Origin: Chlorokybus atmophyticus
Taxonomy: Eukaryota; Plantae; Mesostigma and Chlorokybus algae
Direction: 5' to 3'
DNA length: 32,709 nt
Assembly: GCA_009103225.1 (NCBI GenBank)
Contig: RHPI01000977.1
Coordinates: 68,478 to 101,186, forward strand
Shown here: one piece after another, positions 2,269-29,154 of the stretch
Layout of the letters: every line of letters begins with the position of its first letter
Numbering within the stretch: the stretch's first letter is position 1
Translations under genes and position numbers: made by a program
The notes under the pieces: model-generated
Told to the model about the DNA's origin: nothing
Seen by the model: the letters and a program-made list of their open reading frames with translations, nothing else
Database searches by the model: none

Positions 2269-3524
2269 GCAATAGCAGCATGGTTGACAGCCGCTGCCGC
2301 CTCCACCTCCGCCTTCGTCTCCCGCAGGTGCTGCTGCAGCACAGCAAAAACAGCAGGATCCAACATACTGAAAGATTTTGGCAGTGCCTTCAAGTGGGAG
2401 CACCCGTCCAGTTTCAGCTTTCGCAGTGCAGAGAGCTTGCCAAAGGACTCCGGCAGCACCGCCAAACTGTCGCACCAGCTTAGGTCCAGCTCACGCAAAG
2501 CAGCGAGCTTGCTGAAGGACTCTCCCAGCACTGCCAAGCGGTCGCACGCGCTCAGATTCAGCGTTTGCAGATTGTTCAATTCGCCGAGGGACTCCCGCAG
2601 TGCCTCTAGGCTACCGCAATAGCTCAAGTCAAGCGTTTGCAGGGCAACGAGACTACCAAAGGACTCCGGCAGCTCCGCCAAACTGTTGCAATTGGTCAGG
2701 TCCAGCATCTGCAGGGCAGTGAGTTTGCCAAAGTACTTTGGCAATGCCGCCAATCTTTCGCAACTTCTCAGGTCCAGCGTTTGCAGCATAGCGAGGTTGC
2801 CAAAGGATTCCGGCAGCTTCACCAAGCTGAGGCTATTGCTCAGGTCTAGCGTTTGCAGCATAGCGAGGTTGCCAAAGGACTCCGGCAGCTTCGCCAAGCT
2901 GTTGCACTTGCTCAGGTCCAGCATTTACAGGGCAGGTTGCCAAAGGACTCCGGCAGTGCCGCCATGCTGCCGCAATAGCTCAAGTCAAGCGTTTGCAGGG
3001 CCACGAGACTACCAAAGGACTTCGGCAGCTCCTCCAAGCTGAGGCTTTACCTTTAAGTCCAAGTCCTGAAGGTGCATGAGATCTCCTACAGACTCGGGTA
3101 GCTTGTGCAAACCGGTTCTAGAGAAAACTAGAGTCTGTAGCATAGCGAGCCCGCCAAGCGCTTCAGGCACATTCATCAGAGGTTCACAGCCCCGCAGCAC
3201 CAGGATTTGCAGCGCCTTGAGGTTTCCAATGGACTCAGTCGCCACCATTGAGACATCAACATGAACGGTTTTTTCTACAATTAGAATCACTAATGTAGTG
3301 CACGCAGCGGCATTATACAAGAAACTGCTCAAGGCGGAACAGCGTGGACGTCTCCACTCGAGATAGACCAGCTCTCTACGGACCCTATTGGGAGCGTGAA
3401 GTGTGCCATCCCAATCAGTTGTGCCAAGGTCTAGCATGCGGAGGCGAGGCATGAAGGCCATGCCACGTAATGTTTCGCTCCAGTTGAGTCCAGCCCAGGA
3501 CACAGTCTCGGCTTGTTCAGAGCC
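2269..3524 (-). other. Leucine-rich repeat region of copy 1
   Basis: About ten 24-aa repeats of the type LQTLDLSxCxSLxxLPESFGxL (ORFs 2265..2924 and 3009..3530), typical of TNL LRRs. Confidence 0.93.
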
Positions 3525-8259: not shown

Positions 8260-8985
8260 ATGGACCGATTGGTGATTCGGAGGCTGCCTGCAGTGCTAGC
8301 TGCTGCTACATCCATTGTTACTGGTGCCGGCTACTGGAACCACACATATCTCAATTTGGACGCTCCTTATGATGCTGCTATGGTGTAAGTTCAACTACAG
8401 CTTTCCTTGTAAAGCAAGCAGAGCATTCCTGTTGCGACAAAATGCTGCACCATGCTCATAAGATTTTGCATGTGCTGCGGCAAGTAGCGGGCAGGGACGA
8501 GAGGCAACAGGGGCACTGTCCGCGACGCCAGCGGCAATATTGACAGCAATCATCAGCTGCTGCCAGTTTGACAACCAAGACAAAGAGCGCGGAGACTTGC
8601 CGAGCAACTGCAACAAGACAACATAGACGTCATCGTGAACTTCAAGAACCAGTACAAGTCATGGCCGGCTTTCATTGCAGATGCTGCCGGCACAAAGGTA
8701 GCACTTGTCACATTATTACTGGTGGTGAACACCTTGCGCATGGTTGCTGTCATCAACAAACCCCAACTTCTGGCATCTTATGTAGTAAACAGGCACGTCT
8801 GCATGATAGCGATGCATGCTGTGATTTGCAAATCGCAATTGTTCTCATGATGCTTTAGGTGATCGTAGCCGTGTGATGAGCATTATGAGAGATTTTAATT
8901 CAGGAGCCGACCGCAGCTGATGCATTGGGGGCGGGGATGCACGACTACTACACAACGTACTGAACAAGGTTTATGAGAAGCTGAG
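8260..8985 (+). pseudogene. Decayed signal-anchor-SEFIR gene (paralog of 16716-18563), no EP part found
   Basis: Exon 1 MDRLVIRRLPAVLAAATSIVTGAGYWNHTYL...|gtaagt is homologous to MGGLASLRLHAVLAAAAAIVAVAGYWKHTHL. It is followed by ISCCQFD...EQLQQDNIDVIVNFKNQYKSWPAFI...GTK|VIVA.CDEHYERF...GAG.HDYY...NKVYEK with several frameshifts. Homology ends at ~8985. Confidence 0.85.
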
Positions 8986-9710: not shown

Positions 9711-10412
9711 TCAGAGAGATAGGATTACTACCCAAATGAGCCTCATCCTCCTTAACAGCTTGCGAAGTGACGTTGATGTTCCCGCTTTCTCATCAGAGAG
9801 CCGATGAGCCTCCTGCCTGAGGTCATCATCAGGCTCCCGGGCCCCTCTCACCCCAGCAGTGACGAGCTCCTCTAGTGCGTTGTCGATTGAGCTCTTATTC
9901 CTCTCAGGGTACGCATTGCGGTATGCCTGCTCCAGCAGGTAATAACGCCGCGGCCGCACAACAGCCTCAGCAACCGAGAGACGAAGGTAATGCTTGCCGT
10001 TGGAGGCATAAAAATTCGCACCCTTTTGAGAATACCAGTTGGCAATGTCGATGGGCTCCACCAGCAACCGGCGAGCCAGTTGCTTGTGGAAGAAAGAATG
10101 TCCTCTGGGATGGAACCGCGCTCGTACTGCGTTGTAACCCAATCCCAAAAGTTTTTTCAGTTTACCCCGAGCTCTCTCAATCTGTGGTGGCCGGTTCTTT
10201 TTGAAGCCAACATAGTAGTCCTGTTCGTCCTGGTACTGCTTGATAACATCCATCGCGTCATCAACACTATCGTACTTCATGGACAGCTCTGCTGTCTGCC
10301 TGTTCCGAGCATCTTCCCTGTTGCGCACAAACGCGTAGAGTCCATACAGGAACCCGAGCAAGCCAACCAGACAGGCGAGGATGCTGGGCCAGGGAGGCGC
10401 TTGTTCAGCCAT
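9711..10412 (-). CDS. Intronless 233-aa protein: N-terminal TM helix plus EP-like domain plus hydrophobic C-terminal tail
   Basis: Open frame from ATG 10412 (MAEQAPP) to the stop at 9711. Hydrophobic SILACLVGLLGFLYGLYAFV, then DAMDVIKQY...DYYVGFKK...RARGKL...RRLLVEPIDIANWYS...KHYL...RPRRYYLLEQAY (EPIDIA at 10058-10041). Ends RRMRLIWVVILSL. An upstream in-frame alternative start exists at 10487. Confidence 0.85.
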   Translation of the reverse strand: MAEQAPPWPSILACLVGLLGFLYGLYAFVRNREDARNRQTAELSMKYDSVDDAMDVIKQYQDEQDYYVGFKKNRPPQIERARGKLKKLLGLGYNAVRARFHPRGHSFFHKQLARRLLVEPIDIANWYSQKGANFYASNGKHYLRLSVAEAVVRPRRYYLLEQAYRNAYPERNKSSIDNALEELVTAGVRGAREPDDDLRQEAHRLSDEKAGTSTSLRKLLRRMRLIWVVILSL

Positions 10413-13400
10413 ATGTAGGTTGTAATGAGCCCCACGCGTGCATGCGCTCTCGTGCCCCTTTGCACAGCAGACTTTAGCACTGCGCATGCCAGCGAGTGTT
10501 AGTGTTGGTGTTCAACTACTGTCCAACCGATCCTATTGCCGTGGAGCGGAGATATTGCAACGCCCCTCAGCAGTGCGAAACGCTCCTGCCAACCAAACAG
10601 CATGCCAGACTAACTCAATGTGTGCATGCTGGCGAGCCAGATCAGCTTGAAGGGGTAAGCTGCCCTAAATCAGCACCAGCCCAGCCAAGCTGCGGCGACT
10701 CGGACTGGCAATAGTTTCATGCTACTCAGTTCAGCTGACGAGCAGAAACCATGACGCTACTCAGTTCAGCTGGCGAGAATGGTGGCGGCAACAGCTCTCG
10801 GACATGTTCACATCATGGCTTTACGTGAACCGCGCTAAACAACGTGAAATTGAAAGTCAGAAGCTAAAATGTTCTCTACAGCGGCTAGGATGGATCAAGC
10901 AATGTCAGCATTACAATGCTACGCCGGTATGCATGCATGTAAGCCAAGATTGAGCAAGCTTCGCAAGCTGTCACTGGCACTGGTGGATACACAAACAGGC
11001 AGCGCTAGCACGGACGGCTTCTTGCACCTTTTGGCTAACAAGCCGCACCAACCTCTTACGAGGTTAGGCTTCAGGCTTCCTTGCTCCAGCAAGCTCTGGA
11101 GATTGGGGACAGCTTCAGAGCCATGACACTGCGTCCAACTGACCCAGCCAGCAACCTCGGCGACCTACAGCAGCGCTCCTTTCTTCAGGCGCAAGCAGGG
11201 GTTGCCCTTACCCTTAGCCCTTCAGTGCAACGGCAGCGTCGCCGCTCACCCCCTCCTCCCTCCCGCCCCACAGCGTCAACACTGGCTCAGTCTAACGCGA
11301 GAACTCCGTCTGAGAGGTAAGATAAAGTCTTGCGGCAAGCTTGACTTTCTCTCATCGGCTACAGGTAACAAGATTCGTGTCACACGAAACATGTCGCCGG
11401 GTCATCAAGCACAAAATGGTCATAAAACAATGTCGCCTTCTGACAAAGTCTTTTTCACAAAGGTTGGACTGACAAGCATGGGCTCTGTTGGTTGGGTTTT
11501 ATTGACCGAGCCGTGAGGCGTAAGTTGGTGTTGGTGCGAGCTATGCTACAGCCGCAACCTGAATGCCTGAATGCCGAGCTAGAGGTGGGCGGAGGAGCCT
11601 GCAGGGCTGAGCTGAACCGTCATGTAGGCCGCTCTGCTGCTGGGGATAAGTGGTGCAAGCCGCCCACTACGTGACAGCGACACCCCCCTTTTCCCGCCAG
11701 CCGGCTGCGCAGAGCACCAGCTAGCATTGGCCGCAAACATGCACGATGCCCTATGCCTTCTGCTGCTGTTCTCAAGTTTGGTGTAGGCTGCGCGTGTTTG
11801 CTGCAGCTATGACAAGCTGCTTGCTTGGGCATTACTGTTCAAACCAGGATTGAATGAGTCTAGCAGAAGTTGCGTACATACTACTTCAATGTAGTATGAT
11901 ACTACATCGAAGTGCTTACGTTGCAATGACTGCAGTTAGCATAGCAAGCTGCAGCTAATAAGGAGGTTTATTGGTGGCTCAGCAGCAAGGGTTCCTAAGC
12001 CACTTTCGTACCTGCAGACAAGGCTCTAGAAGTCATAGATCCTCGTGACGCTGCGAGGTACGTCTGCAGGTACGAGTGGCTCAATAGATTGAACTAGCAG
12101 TAACTGAAAGTAGCATTGACGCGCGAAGAAGTGACTAGCCCTCGTGATATAACTCTTGCACGAAGCTGTCATGTCACTGCTTGCATTCAGGATACGCTGC
12201 TGACAACGTGACAGCAGCCAGCTCGTTGCTGTCATGTTCTCCATCACCATCATGACAGCCCTGCATTCCGCGGCCAGCATACAGTTTTCGCATGTCTTCC
12301 ATGCTGCGTTTCGGTATCTGCTGAACGGTGCACAATAGCATCATACCTGGATCTTCAGAAATGCTGCACCCTTGAACACAATATAGAAGCAATGGTTAAC
12401 ATGACTTCAAGCCTTACCATTCATACATGCAGTCCCGCGCATACATCTCTGCACGTTCTCCCCATGCATACACTACTGTCTCTCTCTCACTGACATCTGT
12501 ACAGACTTGCACGCAGTCATGATCATGCACTTTCGCTAACACACCCATCCCACAACCACCTACATTCTTACACCCCCACACACATATATTCGTTTAATCT
12601 CACACTCCCAGACAACTGAAAGCTTGAGCTGATGTCTTTCAACAAGCTTTACAAAAGGGGAAGTTCTAATGGTGTACAACACCTGGATGCTTGCATGAAG
12701 AAGTGCATACGTGCAGTGTGGGGGAATGAGAGCATGAGACGCAGGATTTGAAAAGCGGCGGAGTGGGCGGCCAACCTGCGCTGCAGCGGTGCTGGTAAGC
12801 CTGGTAAGCCGAGGTGAAGGCAGCCAGCCGCCAGGCAACGACGATGACACCTACTTCATACACGGCGAAAACGACAAGGCTGCCGTCGCCCCTCCCCCGG
12901 CCAGCACGTCCGGCTAAGTCAATCTCACTTGCCTTGACTTTTTCCTCCTCGCTACACTAGTACAGACTTATGGGGTGGAGGAGAAGAATTGGTGTTAGTT
13001 GCAATGTTTGCGTGCGATGGACGATTGCGGGTTGGCGGATGGACAACGACCGAGGTTGGGCGAAGCCTAACAGATGAATGTCGATGGACGGCTGGCTGAT
13101 TGGGTGGTTCGAAACTTCTGGTCGCCACTGTTGTGTCTGTCAATTGAGCTGGAGCATGTCAACAACCGCAAAGCGAGCTCAGCCTCAGCCTGCTTGCATG
13201 TTAAAGCCAATCTCGAATGCATGCCTCACGAGCACACAAGCACAGTCACACGCACACGGGCGCACACACGCATCCCCCCGTCCCCCCTTTTATCCATAAG
13301 CCAACGTGACCTCTGTGCGCATGCTTACCTTGCCTGGTTGCAGTACCAGTTGGTGTTTTGTTGTCGCTAGTGGCGTTGGGAGAGAGATGGCTGCGGTAGT

Positions 13401-15650: not shown

Positions 15651-15712
15651 GCAGCTGATTGAGTGTCAAGTTAGACCAGACTACCCTAATGGTTCAGGTT
15701 TATGCTGGAGAG

Positions 15713-16334
<622 letters not shown>

Positions 16335-16715
16335 NATGCGCACGCAGCAAGCTCCAGCATACACTCGCACACGCACACAGCCGAGATCACCGTCGTCCAC
16401 ATGCACGCAGCTACAGACCTCTTCACATGCATGTCCGCACGTATATGCGCACACAGAGAGACACACAGTGACGCACACACATGCAGGTATGCGCTCAGGC
16501 TTGAGTATGAGCACATCATGTCATGCACATTTTGTATAAATGCTTAGGCCCGTTTAGACATACACATGCAGACTCAAGTGGACACATATGCAGGCTCGCA
16601 AGGCTCTTCCAGCGTTCAATCTAATATAACCTGTTTTCTCAAGCTTAATTTGAGGTTTCGTCTCGTGACAAGGTAGAGTACACCTTGTCAAAAGGCGAGA
16701 GGAAGGCACCTCAAC

Positions 16716-18563
16716 TCATGAGCTCCCTTCGATGGCGTTCATCTCGTCCAATGCGTGTTGTGTTGAAGACGGTGCATCACTTTTGTTATGTTTCTCATAC
16801 TGCAGCTCTAAGAACGTGTAGTACTCTGGTCGGTTGTCCGCCTCAAGGTAATGTCGATTGCCGACAGGCCATTGCTTCCACAGCTCAAGCCGGTAGTAGT
16901 TGGCAATGTCAATTGGCTCAACCATGAGTCGAAAACTGTTGCCTCTCGCACACCAAACATTGGACTTGCTAAAAAAGTCAGCAGGCAACATGCCATCCAT
17001 GTGCCATTTGTACGTAGTACGCCAGAAGTCCCGTAGATACCTGTCAGGTTGGTGGGGGGGTTACATCAGTACTTAGCAGTTTTTCACTTTGCAATGAACT
17101 TGAACTTGAACTTGCAACTGCAATGCATGTGACCTGACCTGCGTGCGTCCTCGACTTTTTTCAAGCGCTCTGCTTGCGGGCTGCCATCACCGCCACGATA
17201 TGCTCTGAAGTCAGCATAGTAGTCTGCAGAGGTTTGCGCAAAGGCTTGTATCGTGTCCATGGCATCTTGTGCCTCATTGCGCCACTTGTCAGTAAACTCA
17301 GTTTCATGTCTCCGCTGCTCGACGACACTCAAAACGCCCATTCTCGGTGACTCTGAAGCGCTGCAAAAGTAAACGCACTGAGACTTCACTTGTTATGTGG
17401 TATCAATATGTCGTATCAACACTGCATGTCAGACGCCAATCAGGCCGCAGTGCAAACCTCTGTGGCATGGGCTGCACAAAGGCCGGAACATTTTTCAAGT
17501 GCTTGACGAGGGTGTCGTACCCAACCCAGGGAGCCTATTGCACGAGGATAGGAACAGAAGACCCGCGGACTAATTAAAGCAGCACATCATGGAATACTAC
17601 GTTGAATAGGTGCATGCTGCAAGGTCTAGCTCGTGCATCAAGGAGTGTGCACAGCTTGGAGCACCTCACTCTTTGAACTTACCTGATGACCACCAAGGGT
17701 GAAGTAGCTAAATTTCCGGATCTGCGCAGGAACATCCTTTCTTGCTCCAGGAGGCCGGAAAACGACTGGTACCAACCACCCGGAAAGGTTCTGCTCCTCA
17801 TAAACCTTGTTCAGTATGTTCGTGTACTCGTCGTGCGTCCCCGCGCCCATCTTAACAGCTGCGGTCGGCTGCTTTAATGAAAACCGCTCATAATGCTCAT
17901 CACAGGCCACGATCACCTGAAGCGTCATGAGAACACCCTCAAGCCAAGCATGCCTTGCTGTGATGCAGACGAGCCTGCTTTTTGACAATGTTGAAAGCAA
18001 ATTGCGGGAATTGTTGGTGACAGCGACCATGCGCAAGATTCACGACCAGGAATGATGTGACAACCGGTACCTTGGTGCCATTGTTCAACATCTGCCCAAC
18101 AAAAGCCGGCCAGGACTGATACGTATTTTTGTAGTCGACAATGACTTCTATATTGTTTTGTTGCAGTTGCTCGGCAAGCCTCCTCACACGCTCTGCGTGA
18201 TGCTTGTCGAACTGGCAGTAGCTGATAAACACAGTCATCTTGGCCTCTGGTGCCGCGGACAGTTCCCCTGTAGCCGCTCCTCCCTGTCCGCTATGTGCCA
18301 CAGCACATGCAAAGTACCATAAGCATGGTACAGCATCGGCAAGAAAGAAGCTTGTGCATGCTTTGCATAGAAAGCTGTAACAAAACTTACGCAACAGCAG
18401 CGTTGTTGACAGCAGCTGAGTCTTTTTCCTTATACGTATGCTTATCCTGGTGTTGTAAACTACCCGGGTGGAGATGCGTGTGCTTCCAGTAGCCAGCGAC
18501 AGCGACAATGGCTGCAGCCGCAGCCAGCACTGCATGCAGCCTCAGAGATGCCAGCCCGCCCAT
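16716..18563 (-). CDS. Intact 6-exon signal-anchor-SEFIR-EP protein, 416 aa
   Basis: Exons 18563-18391, 18290-18071, 17916-17683, 17534-17458, 17360-17139, 17040-16716 (173+220+234+77+222+325 = 1251 nt). All introns are GT-AG, phases are compatible and there is no internal stop. Protein: MGGLASLRLHAVLAAAAAIVAVAGYWK...TVFISYCQFDKHHAERV...GAGTHDEY...WLVPVVF...GYDTLVKHL...DYYADFRAY...RRYLRDFW...LPADFF...FRLMVEPIDIANYYR...HYLEADNRPEYY...EGSS*. An assembly gap lies upstream, so a further 5' exon cannot be excluded. Confidence 0.88.
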
Positions 18564-18652
18564 CTCAAGACGCTTCCACTTCTTCTACAAAGCCGAGAGC
18601 GGTGCAGGCTAGCCTTACAAATAGGAGGAGCAAGCCCAGCTCCTGTTCCAGT

Positions 18653-19136
18653 TGAGTTCATTAGCCATGCCCAAACCCACCAAGCGCTATACAGCTGCGG
18701 AAGACCAAAACGAGGGGGGGGGGGGGGGGGGGGNNNNNNNNNNNNNNNNNNNNNNNNNNNNNNNNNNNNNNNNNNNNNNNNNNNNNNNNNNNNNNNNNNN
18801 NNNNNNNNNNNNNNNNNNNNNNNNNNNNNNNNNNNNNNNNNNNNNNNNNNNNNNNNNNNNNNNNNNNNNNNNNNNNNNNNNNNNNNNNNNNNNNNNNNNN
18901 NNNNNNNNNNNNNNNNNNNNNNNNNNNNNNNNNNNNNNNNNNNNNNNNNNNNNNNNNNNNNNNNNNNNNNNNNNNNNNNNNNNNNNNNNNNNNNNNNNNN
19001 NNNNNNNNNNNNNNNNNNNNNNNNNNNNNNNNNNNNNNNNNNNNNNNNNNNNNNNNNNNNNNTGAGTTCATTAGCCATGCCCAAACCCACCAAGCGCTAT
19101 ACAGCTGCGGAAGACCAAAACGAGGGGGGGGGGGGG
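18653..19136. other. Assembly gap (N 18734-19062) flanked by an identical ~70-bp sequence ending in poly-G
   Basis: tgagttcattagccatgcccaaacc...gaccaaaacgagggg occurs at 18653-18733 and again at 19063-19136, typical of unmerged contig ends. Confidence 0.85.
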
Positions 19137-21120
19137 ACAACTGCTGTCAGCTGAGTAAGAATTACCATGAATGTCACGGTAATTTCTGCAGTTCAGAAAC
19201 TTGCACGACTTGCACGACAGCAGCTGCACAAAACGAAGCCAGTACTGTTACTGCCGCCAGTAAGGCCCAAATACCATTGACAACAGAACTTCTCATGCTT
19301 AGGTGCTACAGGATGCTTGCCCTAAGTTACACGGACGCTGCTGCACACAAGCAGCTATATAACTGAGTGGCTGCAAGGGGCACATGTTCATGGCGTTGTG
19401 AAGTTTTGTGTGTCTGTGCGCACAAGTGTGTGCATGCGTATGCATACATACACAGGTGCATGCATGCATGCACGCACACGCACAGGCGCGCGTCAGCATG
19501 TGTGCTGTACGTACAGATGCTGTTGCGCGAGCTGTGAATTTGGTTGAGCTAGAGAAGCTTTCTGGAGGGCGGTCAAGCATGAAAAAGTGGGGCAACCCGG
19601 GGGGTGGGGGTAAGTGCGTGGGCACAACAAATTCACAAAGACGGTAGCAACGGCATTGCAGCGCACCTGCACAAGAAGGCCGAACTCTAAGCTATGCTTG
19701 CGGAGGCAGTAGCCATCTCCGTCAGACTGCGGCGTCAGAGTTACTGCTAACCAGCGCCTCCCAGCATGGCACTGACGGGCTGACAAAAGCTGGCAACCTG
19801 ATGCGCTTTGCGCCCTCCCCCTCCCGGCAAGCCCCTTCCAGCCGCCGGCGGCGCAGCCGCTACACCGCCTAGCAGTCCGTGCCGCCAGTACACAATACTG
19901 GCATATCTACCACATGCAATACTGTATGACCATAACAACAACTTATACTCTTGACAAGGAATGAGGATGCCAGGAGTCCTGGCCGAGCGCACGCATGACA
20001 TGAGAATCTCACATTTCATGACGAGATAGGGTTGTCTAAGAAGCCCAATGTTGGTTTGATCGTGTCAACTCAAGTGCATTTTACATGCTTACACCCTGTT
20101 AGGGGTTACACGTAAGCTGGACGCGCGGTACCTGACTCTGCGTACGGCTTGGGAGCGGACGGCATGGACATGGACATGGACCGGAGCAAGCGGGCGGGAA
20201 GGGCGGGGTGGGGCGAAGGGGCGACGCCTCCTTCCTACGGACAAGATAAGGTGGGACAAGCGTATAAGCCAAGCGCAGCTGCATTCCCCGCACCGGGCGA
20301 AGGTGCGTTGCCGTCACGCCGTCCAACTTTGTGTGGTTGTGTGCGCTGCTTGCACATATAAAAGCAGCATGCCATATGCAGAACAGAAATGTAATGCTTG
20401 ACTTGCATGGCTCGCTCGGTGCAAGCTGGCGGTGCTTGCCGTGGTCGGCAGCGCCATGGCAGGGAATCGACTTGGTTACAGATTCCGAGCGCATGCGTCA
20501 GTGAAGTCACTTCACTGGATGTCAAACATCTAGTTTATTGTCTGCTAGGCCGCAGCCTCATTAGCACCAAGTCGGTACGAGTGGCCGTTTACGAGACATT
20601 GCGTGTAGATTGAAACTCGCTTGTAGCCGTGTACAGTTCTTGGTTCTTGGCTACACTTACTCTTGCTTGGTGCATTGTTGAGAAAGGGTTGCGCACGCAA
20701 TTGCTGTGGCTAGAGACTGCATGCGTAGGTAGCACAAGCACACGCTTCCTGTCATCCGTGTGCGGTCCATTGCATTCCGCTGGAAAGCACCGTGCAGTTA
20801 TATCTAAACATCGGCAGCCTATACATGTGGTTGCGTGCGTGTCATGGTTGCGCACAGGCATTGTGAGCTCAAGTATTATGTATTGCTGCAGGCTACCAAG
20901 GGGGAGCTTGCTTTGATGTCTCAATGTTTGCTTCAGTTGCAAATCAGGACGGTACGCCGGGGAACAACACATACGCGCCTTGATTGTGGTGCTGCATATG
21001 CTGCGCATGTGTTTCGCGCTATTCTTTGCAGCTTATTGTGCAAGAAGGTTATAAGCCATCAAGTGCCATCTACTACAGTCACCATGAGTCCACTGACAAA
21101 CTTACATATTGCACATCACA

Positions 21121-24017
21121 GGCAGATGGACTCCATCAAAGACCATCCCTCACCCTGGCAGTGATATTTTCTTGAGCCATAGAGGGGACGTCAAGAGGAA
21201 CTTTGTTTATTTCCTAAGCCACCTTCTTAAGCAAGCAAGTGAGCATGACCTGCTTCGTGGATGAACTTAGCTTGCAGCCTGGGGACAAAGCCTGGTTTGT
21301 GATTACCGGCAATGTATGGTCCGCTCGTATAAAAATGCATGTTCTATTGTGTAACTATGGGGACTCTTGGTACTGCTTTGAAGAGCTGCGAATTATGATG
21401 GAGGATGCAGAAAACATCGTCAAGCCCATCTTCTTTGATGATAACTTTGACAGCCTGCAAGCCATATTTTAGGAAAGTAAAAGCAGGTGAGTAGATTTGT
21501 ATACATACACACTGTCGCTCATTAAGGTAGACATGTTCCTGGTTGCAAACATGTTTCGTGCTTGCAGCGCATGCCTCAATGGTAAAGAGGAATACATCCA
21601 AAACAAATCGGCATACTGTGATGCGCTTGATATAGCATTTACAACAACGGTTCTTCATGCCTTGGCTCCGCATGCTAGACCTTGCTACAACTGATTGGGA
21701 TGGCACACTTCCTGTTCCCGACAGGGTCCGTTCAGAGCTGGTCTATCTCGAGTGGAAACGCCCGCGCTGTTCAGCCTTGAGCAATTTCTTGTGTAATGCC
21801 GCTGCATGCCAAAACTTGGTCGTCCTAATCATAGAACAAGCCGTCCATGATCATGCCTCAATGACAGTGGCTAAGTCCATAGGAAACCTCAAGGTGCTGC
21901 AAATTCTGGTGCTGCGCGGTTTTTATGATTTGAACGAGCTGCCTGAAGCGCTTGACGGGCTCACTATGCTATAGACTTTAGTTCTCTTCAGAACTGGTTT
22001 GCACATGCTACCCGAGTCTGTTGGAGGTCTCATGCATCTACAAAAACTGGACCTAGCATTAGCCTCAACTTGACGGCGCTGCCGGAGTCTGCAAATGCTG
22101 AACCTGAGCAAATGCAACAGCTTGGCGGCGCTGCCAAAGTCTTTTGGCAAACCGGCTGCCGTACAGACGCTGGACCTGAGCAAGTGCGACAGCTTGATGG
22201 CACTGCCGGAGTCCTTCGGCAAGTTGGACAACTTAGAAAACGCTGAACCAGAGCGCGTGCGACTACTTGGCGGTACTGCAGGAGTCCTTCAGCAAGCTCG
22301 CTGCTCTGCGTGAGCTAGACCCAAGCTGGTGCGCGAGTTTGGTGGCGCTGTCGAAGTCTTTTTGCAAGCTCACTGCTCTGCACAATCTGAAGCTAAACGG
22401 GTACTTCCATCTGAAGGCGCTGCCAGAAATCTTCAGTGCGCTGCATCCTGCTGTTGTTGCTTTGCTACAGCACCAGCAGGAGGCGAAGGCAAAGGCCTCG
22501 GCCGCTATCGATAATGCTGCTACTGCTGTGCAGCAGCACCAGCAGGACGCGGAGGCCAAGGCCGAGGCCGCTGTCAACCATGCTGCTACTTCGTAAGTTT
22601 AGCATGGCTGTCTTCGCAAACCATGCGCAAACTCTTGTGCGGCAAATGCTTTACCATGCTTATAACAATTTGCGTGTGCTGCGGCATATAGCGGACAGGG
22701 AAAAGAGGCGAAGTTGACAGTATTCATCAGCTACTGCCCCTTTGACAAGCATCACGCAAAGCGTGTGTGGAGGCTTGTTGAGCAACTGCAACAAGATAAA
22801 GTACCCGTCATTGTCGACTACAAATCTGGATACCAATCATGGCCAGCTTTTATTGGGCAGATGTTTAAGGATGGCACAAAGGTACCAATGGTCACATCAT
22901 CTCTGATAGTGTAGAACATCTTGCGCATCGTGGCTGTCATCATCCATTCCCATCTTACATAGATTATATAGTAAGCAAGCACGTGAGCATGACAGACATG
23001 CATGCTTGGTTTCCGGTTGTTAACATAACGTTTCAGGTGGTGGTGGTTTGTGATGAGCATTATGAGCGATTTTCATCAAAACAGCCACCCGCAGCCGATA
23101 GGATGGGCGCGGGGACGCACGACGAGTACACGAACATACGAAACAAGGTTTATGAGGAGCAAAATCTTTCCGGGTGGTTGGTTCCAGTCATCTTCCGCCC
23201 CCCCGGAGAAAGAAAGCACGTACCAACGCTCATTCGAAATTTGGCTACTTCACCCTTGGCGATCAGCATGCAAGTTTAAAGGGGGAGGTGCATTTGCTTC
23301 ACGCTATGCAAACCTTTATGCACGAGCAAGACTTTGTAGCATGCGCTCAGTCTTTCTGAATGGTCTTACATGACGTCTGCGTTAGTAACTCCGTGGCTCT
23401 TTCGATGCCATCCTCATGCAATGGTAACCCTGGGCTGGGTACGACACCCTCATCAAGCACTTGGGAAGTGTGCCGGCCTTCATGCCCATGTCACACAGGT
23501 TTGCATTGCAGCCCACTTGACCTGCAGTGTTGACCTACCATGACATCCATAGTCCTAGAGCATTGTATATTGCAACGCTTCAGAGCCACAGAGAGTGGTC
23601 GAATCGCGTATTGCCACGCAGCAAAGCCATGAAACAGAGTTTGCTAACATGTGGCGCAAGGAGGTATAAGACGCCATGGACACATAACAGCCTTTTTGCT
23701 GACCTCGGCAGACTTCTACGCTGACTTCAGAGCATATTATGGCAGTGATGGCAGCCCGCAAGCAAAGCGCTTGAGAAGGGTCGACCGTGCACGGAGGTTA
23801 AGATTTGCGCAATTGAACGCTTGCTCGGTACTGTTATGACCTCCCCACCAACCTAACAGGGTTACACGGGACTTCTGGCGTATAGCATACAAGTGGTACA
23901 TGGATGGCATGTTGCCTATTTTTTCAGCAAGTCCAGTGTTTGGTTTGTGAGAGGCAACACGACGCGACTCATGGTTGAGCCCATTGACATTGCCAATTGG
24001 GCTCGAGCTGTGGAAGA
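21121..24017 (+). pseudogene. TIR-(NB-ARC deleted)-LRR-SEFIR-EP(truncated) relic, copy 2 of the fusion NLR
   Basis: TIR DIFLSHRG.DVK...TCFVDELSLQPG...SWYCFEEL...KPIFFDD. TIR exon 2 runs out of frame directly into MPWLRMLDLATTDWDG at ~21650. Shortened LRRs, SEFIR exons (22700-23490), and EP up to LMVEPIDIANW (23977-24000). Many stops and frameshifts. Confidence 0.9.
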
Positions 24018-26715
24018 TGTCATGCCTATTGCCCGCGCATACCAGCTATTATCGAGCATGCCTACATCGAAACCATCGTCCGGCCTACCAGCATACCAAC
24101 TCGCGCGCGTCACTGATCAGTAGCTAGGTCATGACTCTAGAGTAGCTCACGACCAGAGCCTACATAGGCACCGCGCGTAGCTGTTCAGTTGTGAGTTCGG
24201 TTATAAGTGGTGTTCTATATCAAGTGGTGATTGCTGTGGAAATAGCCTCGAAGTAACTGTTAGCTGTTCTGAACAGTCATGATTTGACTTGTATAAGTAG
24301 TCACGGTATTCACCGGATCAGCTGGTGACACTGTGAGTGAGAAAGCTAAGAGCTTGTGAAGCGACTTGAATGGCTAGCACGACATTCCGGTTATTACTGA
24401 GAAACCCCTCACTATGTGAGAGCCTGTGGATGCTCGTGTGCATCGTGCTTGTCATTGCTGTGAGCTTGGTGTGCCTGGTTGCAGTGTGCTTGTTGGCATC
24501 AATCAGGGCATAGTATCCACGTGTTGCTTGCTCATTCACCTCACTAAATAGTATAACACATTTTCCGCTCATGCAAAGAATTGTGTAAACAGCACTACCT
24601 ATAGTAGTGGCTTGTTGACTCACAGTGTCACCCTCTGTGCTCAAGTCAGTGCGTCGTATTCTGCATCAGAGCGTGCAGTCTATATCTGGGGACACATCCA
24701 TGTGCATTCGTTGTCACTGTCATCACATAATGCACACACAAGCACTAGTGTGGTGAGTGGTAGCGGCATCAAGACAGGCGGTAGAGCACAAACACTCTAC
24801 CCTGCATACACTTTAACACTATGATGGCTTTTGTACTATATATAGTACTTGTACTATAGGAAGTACTGAAAAACAGACTTTTTGGGCCACCAGGTTATAA
24901 GAAGTAAATTAATTTGTTAATTAACATATCCTATATGGTTAAACTCAAAATTTGAAGGAGAACACGGGAAAATTGTCCTTAGAAATTTATTGCTTAATAG
25001 TCAACTAGGTCTGCAATTTCAAAGTCAAGTCTAAACTGCGTTTTTTGGGTATTTTTCGCCCATTTTGGCGGCGCTTTCAGCAGTGAGTTAGCCCCGCTCC
25101 TAGCAAGCTCTGGCGGCTGAAAAGCCCTGGCGATGGCGTCCTCATCGGAGGCAGCGGCGGCGGCGGCGGATAGGTCCAGGGGTTGGGTAGGTAGGAAGGT
25201 GAAGGCCCCAGCTACTTACTGGACAGTAGCGTGGGCTAAGGCAGAGTTTGGGGCAGCTTGGCAAGTTGCCTACATTGATGGGCACGTTGTGGGCTTCAAG
25301 CAGGGGCCCACAACGAGCGGCGATAGCTGGGAGGTGTGGTGGGCATATGACGGCACCAATGGCTTGCTTGCCTTGAATGCCATGCTATCCTACCTTCAAG
25401 AAGAAGAGGGCGACTCACGTCAGCAGCAGAAGGGTGGGGAGGACTTAGCAAGCCTCTTGCATGCGTTAGATGATAGGCTGGAGGAGGAAGAGGAGTGCTT
25501 GCCAGAGGAAGAGGAGCAGCGCCTGCCAGAGAGTGAAGAAACGGAGATAGAGGAGGATGAGGAACTGAACAGTAAACATAAGGGAAGGATGAGGGAGAGA
25601 GGCAAAGGGAGAGGCAGGGGAGGCAGGGGGCGTGGAGTTGCAGCTGGTTGCGGAGCAGGGAGAGGGAGGGGAGGAGGGAGAGGCTCATCCCAACCAACTG
25701 TGCCACGCGGGTCAGGCAGGCCGAGGGGGAGGGGGCGGGCGCCGCGCGCGCATGTGCGTGTCAGCCTGCGCCAGCCGCTGGACAGTGAGGACGAGGTGTC
25801 TCCTGATTCTGCAAGCAGCGAGGATGAAGCCCCCACCGGTAGGTATTGCGTGCACATGCATGCGCTCAACAGAATACATCACAACCCACACAACACTTAT
25901 TGTTGACTACACTCACAGGCATGGATGAAGATGTAATTGGCAGTGCATATGATGATGAGGAAATCGATCCGCGTGCTGTTCGTTGGCGTGTGGGTGGAGA
26001 GGATGAAGTGTACAATTGGCTTGCTGCTGATTCTTTCGTGGGTCATACGGGTCCGTGCATTCAAGACTTGAGTGGTAAAAACCCCTTGCAACTCTTCCTC
26101 CTCTTCTTGCCATTGGTTTTTTGGGATCATGCGGTGATGTAAACCAACCTATACGCTAGCGCCCAACGCACACACCTTGATGTTGAAGCGGGTCGTGCTG
26201 GATTCCTGTCACACGTCAAGAGTTGTTGCAATGGGTGGGTCTCACGCTAGCCATGGCATGTCACACATTAAATGACATGCAATCTCATTGGCGCACCGGT
26301 CTAATGGGGGCAATCACATTTCCTAACGTTGCACGGTGTATGCCATTCAAACGCTATCAAGCCATAAAACGCTACTTTCACCTTAATGATAATAGCCAAC
26401 GCCCTAGTGAACATGCTACACGTGAGTACCGGCTATGGCACATACTACCCGTAATCAACACACTACGTGACACATTCCGCAAGAACTATAAGCCTGGTAA
26501 ACACATTACTATTGATGAGTGCACCATGCCTATACGCAATAAGACGTGCCCTATTCATAAATACAACTCTAGCAAACCTTACAGGTTCGGTATTGAAGTG
26601 TTCCAAGCATGTGACTCGGACACATACTATTGCTATGATTTTATAGTATATGACAAGCTACCTAGGCACGAGTTGCACACATGGGTAGTGAAAGAACTAG
26701 TAGCTAATGTGCCAT

Positions 26716-27393: not shown

Positions 27394-27488
27394 CAACACG
27401 ATTGTTATCACCATCATTACCTCACATCGCTCTCATGCCAATCAGCGTTTTCTCTCCCTTCTACCCTTCACTTACATTATCATCAACG

Positions 27489-27910
27489 CCCTCCCATCAG
27501 CCAGTCAGTCCGCCCCCCTCCCCTCTCACTTACACCATCATCAACATCACCACCACAACTCCCTCCCATCAGCCAGTCAGTCTGCCCCCCTCCCCTCTCG
27601 CTTACACCATCATCAACATCACCACCACAACTCCCTCCCATCAGCCAGTTGGTCCGTGTTCCCTCCCCTCTCACTTACACCATAAACAACATCACCACCA
27701 CAACTCCCTCCCATCAGCCAGTTAGTCCGTGCCCCCTCCCTCTCACTTACACCATCCTCAACATCACCACCACAACTCCCTCCCATCAGCCAGTTAGTGC
27801 GTGCCCCCTCCCCTCTCACTTACACCATCCTCAACATCACCACCACAACTCCCTCCCATCAGCCAGTCAGTCCGTGCCCCCTCCCCTCTCACTTACACCA
27901 TCATCAACAT
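27489..27910 (+). repeat. Minisatellite, about six 72-73 bp units, inside a transposase intron
   Basis: The unit ccctcccatcagccagt.agt..g..ccctcccctctcacttacaccatc.tcaacatcaccaccacaact starts at 27489, 27561, 27633, 27706, 27778 and 27851. Confidence 0.93.
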
Positions 27911-29154
27911 CTCCCTCCCTCCAACTAGTCCCGTCAGTCAGTCCCCCTCCTCTCCCCCTCTCAATGTTGTGCTCCCCTCACCACCCCTCACCGTGCTTTG
28001 CAGGCATATAGATGCATTCAAATATGTGATTGGGCGCTTCTCTGGACACCATTTTGTCTGCATGCATCCCACCAAGCAAAGGTGGTGCTTGGTGTGCAGC
28101 GCCGACGCCAGGAATGCAGAGTTGCAGCTCGGGGGAGTAAGAGGCAGAGGCAAGAAGTCATGCTATTGGTGTGAGCCTTGCAATGTGTACTTGTGTAAGG
28201 AGCCGTGCTTCCAAAGATACCACACCGACCGGGCAATTGTGGGTGTTGATGTTGGCCCCAAGCGGAAGAGAAGGAGCATAGCTGAGAGTATGTAGATTGG
28301 CCTAGGTTGGCACTTTAGTGACGATTGTGATGAGAAATTTGACTCATTTATGGTGATGGCCACATGCTACACTTTGCGTGTAGACAATGTATAAGACATG
28401 CAATGCGGTGTGTACAGACGAGTATTGTACACAAGTCAAGCTAAAAGGAGGCCCATAACCTTGCTATATCATACATGTGACACAGCCAATACATGCCATA
28501 ACCATAGGTCTACTCAACATCTCATTTGCGGCGCTATCGAAATGACCACTTGCGCAGTGCGCAGGCTATATACCCACAAGCACTCTATGATTTTTCATGC
28601 GACCCTCGGATGCCAATGGGCTGAGTGAGTAATTTTCCATGGATATACACATCATACAGAGAGCGTCATTAAGAGGGCTTGATTTTTAGACCTCTACATT
28701 GCATGTGGCCTGTTACCTAAAATTCACCTTAACAGTAATTTTTTCAGTACAGTTACTGGCCAGGCTAGTGTTAACCTGTGGACTAGCTGTCTGAGCATGC
28801 CCACCCCGTTTTCTTCAATAGACAGGGGTGACCTCAGCAGCTGGAGCCCAACCACCAATCTCATGTTAAAGAAAATAGCAACACATGTAGCTAAGGCTGA
28901 TGCTGGACATGCACACACACAACTCTACAGCCGCGAGAGCATACACAAAAGCAACACTTTCACTTCATTACAACTCATTCATGGGTTTTATACCCGCTGC
29001 AGTTACACCTGTCTACTCTAGAAGCAACTGTGTACGCTACACGTCATCCTTTCTCATGAGCTTAGCTGCATAACGTAGCTAACTTCAAGACCTTTCCAAC
29101 AAGCTAAGCCACGCGCCAAATGGTTACGTAACCACCAAGTTATAAGCGTTCTTT

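What the first reader, a model, noticed from the sequence alone, without database searches (positions are those of the whole stretch)
16716..18563. Intact membrane-anchored SEFIR-EP protein (416 aa), invisible in the ORF track
Six exons join without any disruption, whereas all paralogous SEFIR-EP copies in the window are damaged, which points to purifying selection on this copy. Exon 1 (58 codons) encodes an N-terminal hydrophobic helix followed by YWK. A TM-SEFIR layout recalls animal IL-17 receptors and bacterial SEFIR proteins, but here it has a plant EP-like output domain.
Basis: partly seen in the sequence, partly recalled or inferred. Interest (0 to 1): 0.88.

Follow-up and report, generated by a model that had tools for sequence, protein, structure and literature searches.

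The report
Intact algal SEFIR-EP immune-like gene
The early-branching green alga Chlorokybus has an intact, expressed gene that joins a bacterial-type TIR-like (SEFIR) domain to a short but genuine copy of the EP domain, which is usually treated as the hallmark of the seed-plant immune hub EDS1; this suggests the link between TIR-type enzymes and EP domains is much older than seed plants.

Summary
On the minus strand, six GT-AG coding exons (18563..16716) give an uninterrupted 416-aa protein. RNA contigs from three runs show all five introns at exactly these borders, plus a further 5'UTR intron (18643-19666).

The protein is identical to the public JGI model Chlat1 Chrsp235S03603 of Chlorokybus atmophyticus, so the gene itself is not new.

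- **SEFIR domain:** residues 76-235 pass Pfam SEFIR and TIR_2. They hit the bacterial defence model bSEFIR at 1.6e-22. The fold matches solved SEFIR and TIR domains. Glu161 is invariant in 39 bacterial relatives.
- **EP domain:** residues 243-416 pass Pfam EDS1_EP. The model superposes on rice EDS1 and Arabidopsis PAD4 EP domains (Z 18.7 and 16.7). The domain is short: it ends near EDS1 residue 560. There is no lipase domain.
- **Copies:** the three other copies in the window are broken. An intact 85%-identical paralog lies elsewhere in the genome. dN/dS against the nearest broken copy is 0.28.
- **Membrane anchor:** plausible but weak.

Catalysis, ligand binding and partners are inferred, not shown. 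This scan had already noted the family: truncated copies on other pieces of this genome and a dead TNL fusion in this window. No searched paper mentions SEFIR together with EDS1.

The parts
19667..19875 (-). Non-coding 5'UTR exon. The upper end is approximate and is set by how far the RNA contig reaches.
   Evidence: The loose end at 18645 in X1, X2 and X3 matches 19670-19699 exactly. The donor is CAG|GTGCGC. There are two in-frame uATGs, both closed by stops.
18643..19666 (-). 5'UTR intron (GT..AG). It contains the assembly gap (run of N) and its duplicated 74-nt flanks.
   Evidence: repeat D10.
18391..18642 (-). Exon 1: the rest of the 5'UTR, the ATG at 18563, the hydrophobic N-terminus and the start of the linker (aa 1-58).
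   Evidence: An in-frame stop lies 21 nt upstream of the ATG.
18486..18554 (-). N-terminal hydrophobic segment, aa 4-26 (LASLRLHAVLAAAAAIVAVAGYW). It is a candidate signal anchor or signal peptide.
18071..18290 (-). Exon 2: the end of the linker and the first half of the SEFIR domain (strand A VFISY, helix A, strand B, helix B).
17683..17916 (-). Exon 3: the second half of the SEFIR domain.
17683..18238 (-). SEFIR domain core, aa 76-209 (genomic span, includes intron 2). The bSEFIR match and the fold run on to about aa 235 in exon 4.
   Evidence: Pfam SEFIR 38.1 bits and TIR_2 35.8 bits. PADLOC bSEFIR 1.6e-22. Fold matches.
17827..17829 (-). Codon of Glu161 in the motif GAGTHDEY. This is the candidate catalytic glutamate.
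   Evidence: Invariant in 39 bacterial bSEFIR-type sequences and 2 algal ones. Coordinates.
17458..17534 (-). Exon 4: the end of the SEFIR fold and the interdomain linker (aa 210-235).
17139..17360 (-). Exon 5: the first long helices of the EP domain (aa 236-309).
16716..17040 (-). Exon 6: the EP core with EPIDIANYYR, and the stop codon.
   Evidence: Pfam EDS1_EP 4.5e-10 on this exon alone. phmmer.
16719..17338 (-). Short EP domain, aa 243-416 (genomic span, includes intron 5).
   Evidence: pLDDT is 80 (aa 241-250) and 88-98 in the following ten-residue blocks. VIA Z 18.7 to OsEDS1 394-560 and Z 16.7 to AtPAD4 292-464.
16566..16715 (-). 3'UTR, at least 150 nt.
   Evidence: RNA contigs reach 16566 (table 8).

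Best explanation
Shown: this is a real, spliced, expressed gene of Chlorokybus, identical to JGI Chlat1 Chrsp235S03603. Its 416-aa product has four parts:
- a short, weakly hydrophobic N-terminus;
- a low-complexity linker;
- a SEFIR domain of the bacterial anti-phage (bSEFIR) type, which keeps that family's invariant glutamate (E161);
- a C-terminal domain homologous in sequence and fold to the first ~170 residues of the EP domain of EDS1, PAD4 and SAG101.
There is no lipase domain.

Inferred mechanism: the protein is a stress or immune signalling module. On activation, probably by self-association, the SEFIR domain cleaves NAD+ as bacterial SEFIR and TIR domains do. The fused EP domain acts as the pairing and nucleotide-sensing or relay surface, either with itself or with one of the many membrane-anchored stand-alone EP proteins of the same genome.

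The module works alongside NLR-type sensors. Receptor genes have captured it more than once: the TNL-SEFIR-EP and LRR-SEFIR-EP copies in this window, and P0003 elsewhere.

The N-terminal segment probably tethers the protein to a membrane with the domains facing the cytosol.
For: - Gene and expression.
- Selection: dN/dS 0.28 against copy A, with SEFIR 0.26 and EP 0.29. Against the intact paralog P0001, the domains are 85-90% identical and the linker 72% with indels.
- SEFIR by sequence: Pfam SEFIR 2.3e-9 and TIR_2 1.3e-8, both above the curated cut-offs. PADLOC bSEFIR 1.6e-22. The ESM Atlas nearest clusters are all bacterial SEFIR/TIR at 0.95. tblastn finds plasmid SEFIR proteins at 24-32% identity, and the three I scanned (the Deinococcus and two Bacillus proteins) are themselves strong bSEFIR members.
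- SEFIR by fold: the domain model has pTM 0.69. Its best matches are IL-17R/ACT1 SEFIR (Z 13.0), IL-17RA SEFIR and SPARTA TIR (Z 11.9 each) and the prokaryotic SEFIR 5y8e (Z 10.9).
- Conserved glutamate: E161 is invariant across 41 sequences.
- Bacterial SEFIR as an NADase: bacterial SEFIR is listed among the NAD+-depleting defence domains that yield ADPR and nicotinamide (paper 10.64898/2026.09.04.749371).
- EP domain: Pfam EDS1_EP 6.6e-11, 42.7 bits against a cut-off of 23.1. PDB sequence hits are PAD4 1.6e-5 and rice EDS1 6e-3. The top 24 Foldseek hits are all EDS1, PAD4 or SAG101. VIA gives Z 18.7 and rmsd 1.8 A over 159 residues.
- Ligand contacts: EDS1 contacts D469, N472, Y473 and K478 (paper 10.1101/2022.04.01.486681) align with D353, N356, Y357 and K364 (alignment).
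- Link to NLRs: LRR regions lie directly upstream of copies A and B, and P0003 is LRR+SEFIR+EP.
- Membrane theme: a strong N-terminal transmembrane helix is common in the stand-alone algal EP proteins.
Against: - No enzymatic, binding or localisation data exist. I inferred E161 as the catalytic residue from conservation and by analogy with TIR NADases; I did not superpose it on a known active site.
- The EDS1 R493 equivalent is Tyr382, T482 is Val368, and PAD4 K379, K380, Y383 and F387 are not conserved. The seed-plant ligand pocket is therefore not preserved as such.
- The EP domain lacks the last ~60 residues of the EDS1 EP domain.
- The first AF2 alignment included two Ginkgo EDS1-family sequences, which could pull the model towards the EDS1 fold.
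- The N-terminal segment is marginal for a membrane helix.
- The dN/dS partner is a pseudogene, so 0.28 is an average over a mixed history.
Confidence: 0.5

Rival explanations
1. Non-catalytic adaptor. As in animal IL-17R/Act1 signalling, the SEFIR domain serves only for homotypic SEFIR-SEFIR assembly, for example with the SEFIR parts of NLR-SEFIR-EP receptors. The EP domain recruits a downstream partner, and no small molecule is made.
For: The best structural match is the IL-17RA/RB/ACT1 SEFIR assembly. SEFIR-EP modules sit at the C-terminus of LRR and NLR genes. This fits homotypic recruitment between free and receptor-borne modules.
Against: By sequence the domain is much closer to bacterial bSEFIR (1.6e-22) than to the general SEFIR model built largely on animal proteins (2.3e-9). 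It also keeps the bacterial family's invariant Glu and GxG motif, and that family is reported to deplete NAD+.
Confidence: 0.25
2. Secreted or lumenal protein. The N-terminus is a cleavable signal peptide (n-region MGGLASLR, Ala-rich h-region, AVA|G), so the SEFIR-EP part lies outside the cytosol.
For: The uncharged run is only 16 residues and ends in a -3/-1 Ala-x-Ala site.
Against: TIR and SEFIR enzymes use cytosolic NAD+ (established knowledge). Related algal EP proteins carry long, clearly membrane-spanning helices followed by basic residues, which points to a tether with cytosolic domains. I could run no signal-peptide predictor.
Confidence: 0.1
3. A redundant young duplicate with no function of its own: one member of a fast-turnover family that simply has not yet been hit by a disabling mutation.
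For: Three of the four SEFIR-EP copies in this window are already broken. Further truncated copies exist elsewhere (P0002 and P0084; scan notes).
Against: dS to copy A is 0.45, so the duplication is not recent, yet the frame is clean over 1251 nt. omega is 0.28. The gene is transcribed and correctly spliced in three RNA data sets. The two domains are more conserved than the linker.
Confidence: 0.08

Closest known systems
EDS1 / PAD4 / SAG101 (seed-plant EDS1 family; Pfam EDS1_EP PF18117; PDB 4NFU, 7XEY, 8ZF0)
   Same: The C-terminal helical domain is homologous in sequence (42.7 bits; PAD4 1.6e-5) and in fold (Z 15-19, rmsd 1.3-2.3 A over 150-160 residues). It includes the EPxDIANYYR motif, whose D, N and Y contact pRib-ADP in EDS1. 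It also occurs in a genome with TIR-NLR genes.
   Different: There is no lipase-like domain; a SEFIR domain sits in that N-terminal position. The EP domain stops at about EDS1 residue 560. The R493 equivalent is Tyr. The host is a streptophyte alga, not a seed plant. In my quick tree the seed-plant EP clade groups with the algal TM-EP type rather than with this SEFIR-linked type, but support is weak.
Bacterial bSEFIR anti-phage defence proteins (PADLOC PDLC03957; Pfam SEFIR PF08357)
   Same: The SEFIR domain matches at 1.6e-22. It shares the VFISY strand, the invariant Asp and Tyr, and the GxG..E motif with E161. Bacterial members are reported to deplete NAD+.
   Different: The bacterial C-terminal region (profile positions about 200-412) is absent. 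The EP part alone gives no PADLOC hit. The gene is eukaryotic, with spliceosomal introns and an N-terminal hydrophobic segment.
Animal IL-17 receptors and Act1/CIKS (SEFIR adaptors)
   Same: SEFIR fold (Z 13.0 to 9ot1_E and 11.9 to IL-17RA 4nux), with a hydrophobic segment N-terminal to the SEFIR domain.
   Different: There is no extracellular FnIII ligand-binding domain, because at most ~10 residues precede the hydrophobic segment. By sequence it is closer to the bacterial type. It carries an EP domain that the animal proteins lack.
Stand-alone TM-EP proteins of green algae (e.g. Chlorokybus P0025, P0015, P0036; Elliptochloris bilobata KAK9825429.1, named 'EDS1 EP domain-containing protein' by UniProt)
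   Same: The same short EP unit (Pfam positions ~10-120 of 211), and an N-terminal hydrophobic segment.
   Different: Those proteins have no SEFIR or TIR domain and carry much stronger transmembrane helices. They form a different branch of the EP tree.

Membership tests
SEFIR domain / STIR superfamily | Match to the family HMM above the curated threshold | tested here: met
   Pfam SEFIR 38.1 bits (cut-off 23) and TIR_2 35.8 bits (cut-off 28) on P0083.
SEFIR domain / STIR superfamily | Flavodoxin-like five-strand alpha/beta fold that superposes on solved SEFIR and TIR domains | tested here: met
   The AF2 domain model has pTM 0.69. Foldseek top hits are the IL-17R/ACT1 SEFIR and the prokaryotic SEFIR 5y8e (E 7e-6 to 2e-5). 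VIA Z 13.0, 11.9 and 10.9. Structure alone does not separate SEFIR from TIR (SPARTA TIR Z 11.9).
Bacterial bSEFIR defence proteins | N-terminal SEFIR domain of the bSEFIR type with its conserved motifs | tested here: met
   PADLOC bSEFIR 1.6e-22, 78.9 bits. Invariant F/I/S/Y, D110, Y140, G157 and E161 in 41 aligned sequences.
Bacterial bSEFIR defence proteins | The family's own C-terminal region | tested here: not met
   P0083 residues 236-416 alone give no PADLOC hit at E up to 10. The whole protein gains only about 4 bits over the SEFIR part alone.
Bacterial bSEFIR defence proteins | NAD+ depletion on activation | not testable with these tools
   Needs an enzyme assay. Only conservation of E161 supports it.
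EDS1 family (EDS1/PAD4/SAG101) | EP domain | tested here: met
   Pfam EDS1_EP 42.7 bits (cut-off 23.1), covering only profile positions 14-122 of 211. VIA Z 18.7 to OsEDS1 394-560. So this is a shortened EP.
EDS1 family (EDS1/PAD4/SAG101) | N-terminal lipase-like alpha/beta-hydrolase domain | tested here: not met
   No Lipase_3 or hydrolase hit on P0083, whereas Ginkgo P0065 shows Lipase_3 at 9.4e-23. A SEFIR domain occupies the N-terminal position.
EDS1 family (EDS1/PAD4/SAG101) | Complete EP domain, including the C-terminal helices | tested here: not met
   The protein ends where the alignment reaches EDS1 residue ~560 or PAD4 ~464.
EDS1 family (EDS1/PAD4/SAG101) | Basic residues of the nucleotide pocket (EDS1 K478 and R493; PAD4 R314 and K380) | tested here: inconclusive
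   D353, N356, Y357 and K364 align with EDS1 D469, N472, Y473 and K478. R493 aligns with Y382, and PAD4 K379/K380 align with N336/V337 (alignments; residue list). This is a sequence alignment only.
EDS1 family (EDS1/PAD4/SAG101) | Heterodimer with a second EP protein and recruitment of a helper NLR | not testable with these tools
   No complex prediction or interaction assay was available.
IL-17 receptor-like TM-SEFIR receptors | Extracellular ligand-binding domain, then a transmembrane helix, then a cytosolic SEFIR domain | tested here: not met
   The hydrophobic segment starts at residue 4-11, so there is no ectodomain. The segment itself is marginal.

The most novel reading that the evidence does not exclude
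The SEFIR-EP protein is a one-chain or two-protein ancestor-like version of the seed-plant TIR-to-EDS1 pathway. The SEFIR domain makes an NAD-derived nucleotide. An EP-EP pair, its own or with a membrane-bound TM-EP partner, binds that nucleotide and turns it into a downstream signal. On this reading the coupling of TIR-type enzymes to EP receptors arose in green algae before land plants and before the lipase domain joined the EP domain.
Probability: 0.2. Interest if true: 0.92.

Novelty: new variant of a known kind. Interest (0 to 1): 0.72.

Why it matters
Plant-immunity papers treat the EP domain as unique to the EDS1 family and as an invention of seed plants (PMC9806590, PMC10834447, 10.1101/572826). 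A 2026 preprint concedes only 'short EP-like sequences' in green algae and says robust homology is limited to seed plants (10.64898/2026.05.20.726525).

Here the homology is robust: it passes the Pfam threshold and gives Z 18.7 at 1.8 A rmsd. The domain is expressed and under selection. It is also physically fused to a TIR-superfamily domain of the bacterial NADase type.

A gene fusion is the classic hint of a functional link. This protein therefore gives a direct, cloneable test of two questions: whether EP domains already read TIR- or SEFIR-made nucleotides in algae, and what non-seed plants use in place of EDS1.

The gene model itself is already public, and the scan has met the family before. 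The value lies in the intact full-length reference copy and in the evidence gathered on it.

Tried and rejected
1. **EP as a descendant of the bSEFIR C-terminal region: rejected.** The bSEFIR match first seemed to run into the EP region. The EP part alone gives no hit.
2. **Word-index protein searches found nothing beyond the genus.** I searched with P0001, with P0083 60-235 and with P0083 240-416. All found only Chlorokybus paralogs, so they say nothing about distant relatives.
3. **No clean dN/dS between intact copies.** The look-up of encoding contigs found no CDS for the intact paralog P0001, so I used the broken copy A instead.
4. **The search for related loci failed three times.** It failed with the algal alignments and with a single Deinococcus protein. 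A three-sequence bacterial alignment worked.
5. **The ESM Atlas fold search was unhelpful for EP.** With the full model it gave only the SEFIR match plus periplasmic-binding-protein noise at TM below 0.3, and no EP relatives.
6. **The sigma-70 promoter/terminator scan is meaningless** for a eukaryotic gene, and I ignored it.
7. **IL-17-receptor-like layout: rejected**, because there is no ectodomain.
8. **I could not find who first reported 'short EP-like sequences in green algae'.** The preprint's reference list is not held, and searches for 'EP-like', PF18117 with algae, and SEFIR with EDS1 gave nothing further.
Full report
**1. What is in the sequence**

The window is eukaryotic: it has short GT-AG introns, long (CT)n microsatellites and an assembly gap.

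On the minus strand, six open segments join through canonical GT..AG introns into a 1251-nt CDS, which encodes 416 aa plus a stop. The exons are 18563-18391, 18290-18071, 17916-17683, 17534-17458, 17360-17139 and 17040-16716.

Exon 1 is 57 codons plus two bases, not 58.

**2. Is the gene real**

Public RNA data of the same organism were laid on 16560-18720.
- RNA runs X1 and X3 show all five coding introns as joints at exactly the predicted borders; X2 shows four of the five.
- RNA depth is zero in the intron-only bins.
- A DNA-like run (X5) covers the introns.

All three RNA runs also continue past 18645 into sequence that maps to 19670. This defines a further canonical intron at 18643-19666, which spans the N gap, and a non-coding first exon at about 19667-19875.

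An in-frame stop lies 21 nt upstream of the ATG. The two in-frame uATGs are closed by stops, so the start at 18563 stands. The RNA reaches 16566, giving a 3'UTR of at least 150 nt.

**3. Identity of the organism and the protein**

I ran an exhaustive HMMER search with exon 6 against 1.84 billion representative proteins, followed by a word-index search. These returned P0083, the JGI Chlat1 protein Chrsp235S03603 of Chlorokybus atmophyticus (EukProt EP00898). It is identical to my spliced model over all 416 residues.

So the gene is already in a public annotation. That confirms the earlier scan note's lead that the genome is Chlorokybus.

**4. Paralogs and selection**

The three other SEFIR-EP copies in the window are all damaged:
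- Copy A (425-2166, minus) changes frame within exon 3. It hangs behind an LRR/TNL region.
- Copy B (22630-24088, plus) has two stops in exon 5 and frame changes in exons 3 and 6. It lies behind another LRR block.
- Copy C (8260-8954, plus) is a stop-ridden fragment in which the conserved motif has become GAGMHDYY.

Elsewhere in the genome there is an intact 415-aa paralog (P0001, 85% identical), along with truncated or fused relatives (P0002, P0084, P0003, P0004).

I compared the gene with copy A over 310 in-frame codons by the Nei-Gojobori method:

| Measure | Value |
|---|---|
| dS | 0.45 |
| dN | 0.125 |
| omega, all codons | 0.28 (bootstrap 0.19-0.38) |
| omega, SEFIR part | 0.26 |
| omega, EP part | 0.29 |
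| Differences at codon positions 1 / 2 / 3 | 39 / 38 / 75 |

Identity to the intact paralog P0001 varies by region: SEFIR 90%, EP 85%, and the linker 72% with indels.

This is purifying selection on both domains. The caveat is that the dN/dS partner is now a pseudogene.

**5. The N-terminal domain is a SEFIR of the bacterial type**

Sequence evidence:
- The full protein passes Pfam SEFIR (38.1 bits) and TIR_2 (35.8 bits).
- It hits the PADLOC model of the bacterial defence protein bSEFIR at 1.6e-22.
- Its nearest ESM Atlas clusters are all bacterial SEFIR/TIR proteins.
- tblastn finds plasmid-borne SEFIR proteins of Deinococcus, Bacillus and Nostoc at 24-32% identity over ~90% of the domain. 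The three I scanned (the Deinococcus and two Bacillus proteins) are strong bSEFIR members.

With 39 bacterial relatives fetched from GTDB genomes, the alignment has 13 invariant columns. These include VFISY, D110, Y140, G157 and E161, so GAGTHDE161Y corresponds to bacterial GGVGTE.

A domain model built on that alignment (pTM 0.69) is a five-strand alpha/beta fold. Its best PDB matches are listed below.

| PDB match | VIA Z |
|---|---|
| IL-17R/ACT1 SEFIR assembly | 13.0 |
| IL-17RA SEFIR | 11.9 |
| SPARTA TIR | 11.9 |
| Prokaryotic SEFIR 5y8e | 10.9 |

Bacterial SEFIR is listed among the NAD+-depleting defence domains (10.64898/2026.09.04.749371). That E161 is catalytic is my inference from conservation and from the TIR analogy.

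**6. The C-terminal domain is a genuine but short EP domain**

Sequence evidence:
- Exon 6 alone scores 40 bits against Pfam EDS1_EP.
- The whole protein scores 42.7 bits (cut-off 23.1), covering profile positions 14-122 of 211.
- A sequence search of the PDB gives PAD4 (1.6e-5), rice EDS1 (6e-3) and SAG101. The alignment runs through FW..., LP.DF and EPxDIANYYR.

Structural evidence:
- In the AF2 model, mean pLDDT is 80 for residues 241-250 and 88-98 in each following ten-residue block to 416.
- All top 24 Foldseek hits in the PDB are EDS1, PAD4 or SAG101.
- VIA-align gives Z 18.7 with rmsd 1.8 A over 159 residues to OsEDS1 394-560.
- It gives Z 16.7 with rmsd 1.3 A to AtPAD4 292-464.

The algal domain therefore corresponds to roughly the first 70% of the EDS1 EP domain and lacks the last ~60 residues.

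The pRib-ADP contacts listed in 10.1101/2022.04.01.486681 map as follows, using the sequence alignments only:

| Seed-plant contact | Residue in this protein | Conserved |
|---|---|---|
| EDS1 D469 | D353 | yes |
| EDS1 N472 | N356 | yes |
| EDS1 Y473 | Y357 | yes |
| EDS1 K478 | K364 | yes |
| EDS1 T482 | V368 | no |
| EDS1 R493 | Y382 | no |
| PAD4 K379 | N336 | no |
| PAD4 K380 | V337 | no |
| PAD4 Y383 | A340 | no |
| PAD4 F387 | S344 | no |

The fold and part of the pocket are conserved. The seed-plant ligand site as a whole is not.

**7. The N-terminus**

Residues 4-26 are hydrophobic (KD 2.0). However, the uncharged run is only 16 Ala-rich residues, the Hessa-scale sum is +2.6, and the run ends in AVA|G. 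That fits a weak signal anchor or a signal peptide about equally well.

In favour of a tether: most stand-alone algal EP proteins found by the HMMER search carry a strong N-terminal membrane helix (Hessa sums near or below 0), and the segment is conserved in the paralogs. I rate membrane anchoring as plausible but unproven.

**8. Family and context**

The short EP unit (Pfam positions ~10-120) recurs in 82 proteins at E below 1e-3 among 1.84 billion representatives. These include:
- several Chlorokybus proteins;
- the chlorophyte Elliptochloris bilobata;
- many unnamed metagenome or transcriptome proteins;
- at the weak end, Ginkgo EDS1-family proteins.

Architectures in Chlorokybus include TM-EP, SEFIR-EP, LRR-SEFIR-EP and TM-EP-TIR-EP (P0004). 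The full SEFIR-EP architecture was found only in Chlorokybus.

I built a quick tree of 37 EP cores. Support is weak to moderate and the midpoint root is for drawing only.
- It places the SEFIR-linked EPs with the Elliptochloris sequence and two unidentified lipase-EP genes.
- It places the seed-plant clade (SH-aLRT 95) among the TM-EP types.

The window itself is a cluster: a dead TNL-LRR-SEFIR-EP gene, a SEFIR fragment, a TM-EP ORF, this intact gene and a dead LRR-SEFIR-EP gene.

**9. Mechanism**

What is shown:
- an expressed gene under constraint;
- a bSEFIR-type domain that keeps the family's invariant Glu;
- a fused short EP domain;
- repeated capture of the module by LRR/NLR genes.

What is inferred: the SEFIR domain cleaves NAD+ on activation. 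The EP domain provides pairing and nucleotide sensing or relay, alone or with a TM-EP partner. The N-terminus tethers the protein to a membrane.

The main rival reading is a non-catalytic SEFIR adaptor.

**10. Comparison with the literature**

The searched literature treats the EP domain as defining the EDS1 family and as arising in seed plants. One 2026 preprint mentions short EP-like sequences in green algae but denies robust homology. No paper in the searchable library contains both SEFIR and EDS1.

The protein is not an EDS1-family member, because it has no lipase domain and its EP domain is truncated. It is not a bSEFIR defence protein either, because it lacks that family's C-terminal region. 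It is a new combination of two known domains in an unexpected lineage.

**11. Scan history and tool notes**

The scan has seen this family before: truncated copies on other pieces of this genome and the dead fusion in this window.

Noticed in passing
L006 (ENA ERZ26867466, contig ctg25145) 1409-5937 and L007 (ENA ERZ26858887, contig ctg238838) 1585-4225: Two unidentified intron-bearing contigs carry EDS1-like lipase exons on one strand and in gene order (GHSLGG; FGxPLVGD...RHDIVPRxLLSP), 50-59% identical to Ginkgo EDS1. These are followed by an EP exon of the algal type, 59% and 41% identical to this gene's EP. In L006 a TIR exon lies 1.3 kb further on. If these organisms are not seed plants, the lipase-EP architecture is also older than thought.
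   Followed up: partly
window 9711-10487 (-): This is an intronless 258-aa TM-EP ORF, 80% identical to Chlorokybus P0025. About 35 residues of the EP core read differently (KLKKLLGLGYNAVRARFHPRGHSFF against KLKNFWDWVTTQYERGSIPEDIFSS), which looks like a compensated frame change. Its Pfam EP score drops to 21.3 bits, against 55.6 for P0025. It keeps RPRRYY, the equivalent of EDS1 R493.
   Followed up: partly
window 18653-18726 and 19063-19136, flanking the N run that begins at about 18735: Two 100% identical 74-nt copies ending in poly-G flank the assembly gap inside the gene's 5'UTR intron. This is probably a gap-closing artefact and not biology.
   Followed up: no
window 18237 and 16884-17012 (RNA contigs in X1-X3): RNA contigs branch away from the window at 18237 into sequence that is absent from the window. 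One high-depth X3 contig differs at 6 of 129 bases. So near-identical paralogs elsewhere in the genome are also transcribed.
   Followed up: partly
window about 15700-16350: A very long (CT)n microsatellite of about 650 nt begins roughly 200 nt beyond the mapped 3' end of the gene.
   Followed up: no
P0004 (Chlorokybus Chrsp5S06985, 640 aa); P0072 (Arabis alpina KFK28610.1, 2011 aa): P0004 reads TM helix, EP, canonical TIR, the rear part of a SEFIR, then a second EP in one chain. The Arabis protein, named a TIR domain-containing protein, has an internal EP-like stretch at 962-1116. Both are further TIR-EP fusions.
   Followed up: no
window 2367-3041 and 27444-27950: Tandem 72-nt (24-codon) repeats. 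The first set lies in the LRR block of copy A. The second set lies in a region I did not examine.
   Followed up: no
P0001 residues ~203-215 against window 17683/17534: The paralog's public model carries an extra SSKSVD at the exon 3/exon 4 junction. This looks like read-through into the start of the intron (GTAAGTTCAAAG...) from use of a different donor. It may be a gene-model error or an alternative splice form.
   Followed up: no
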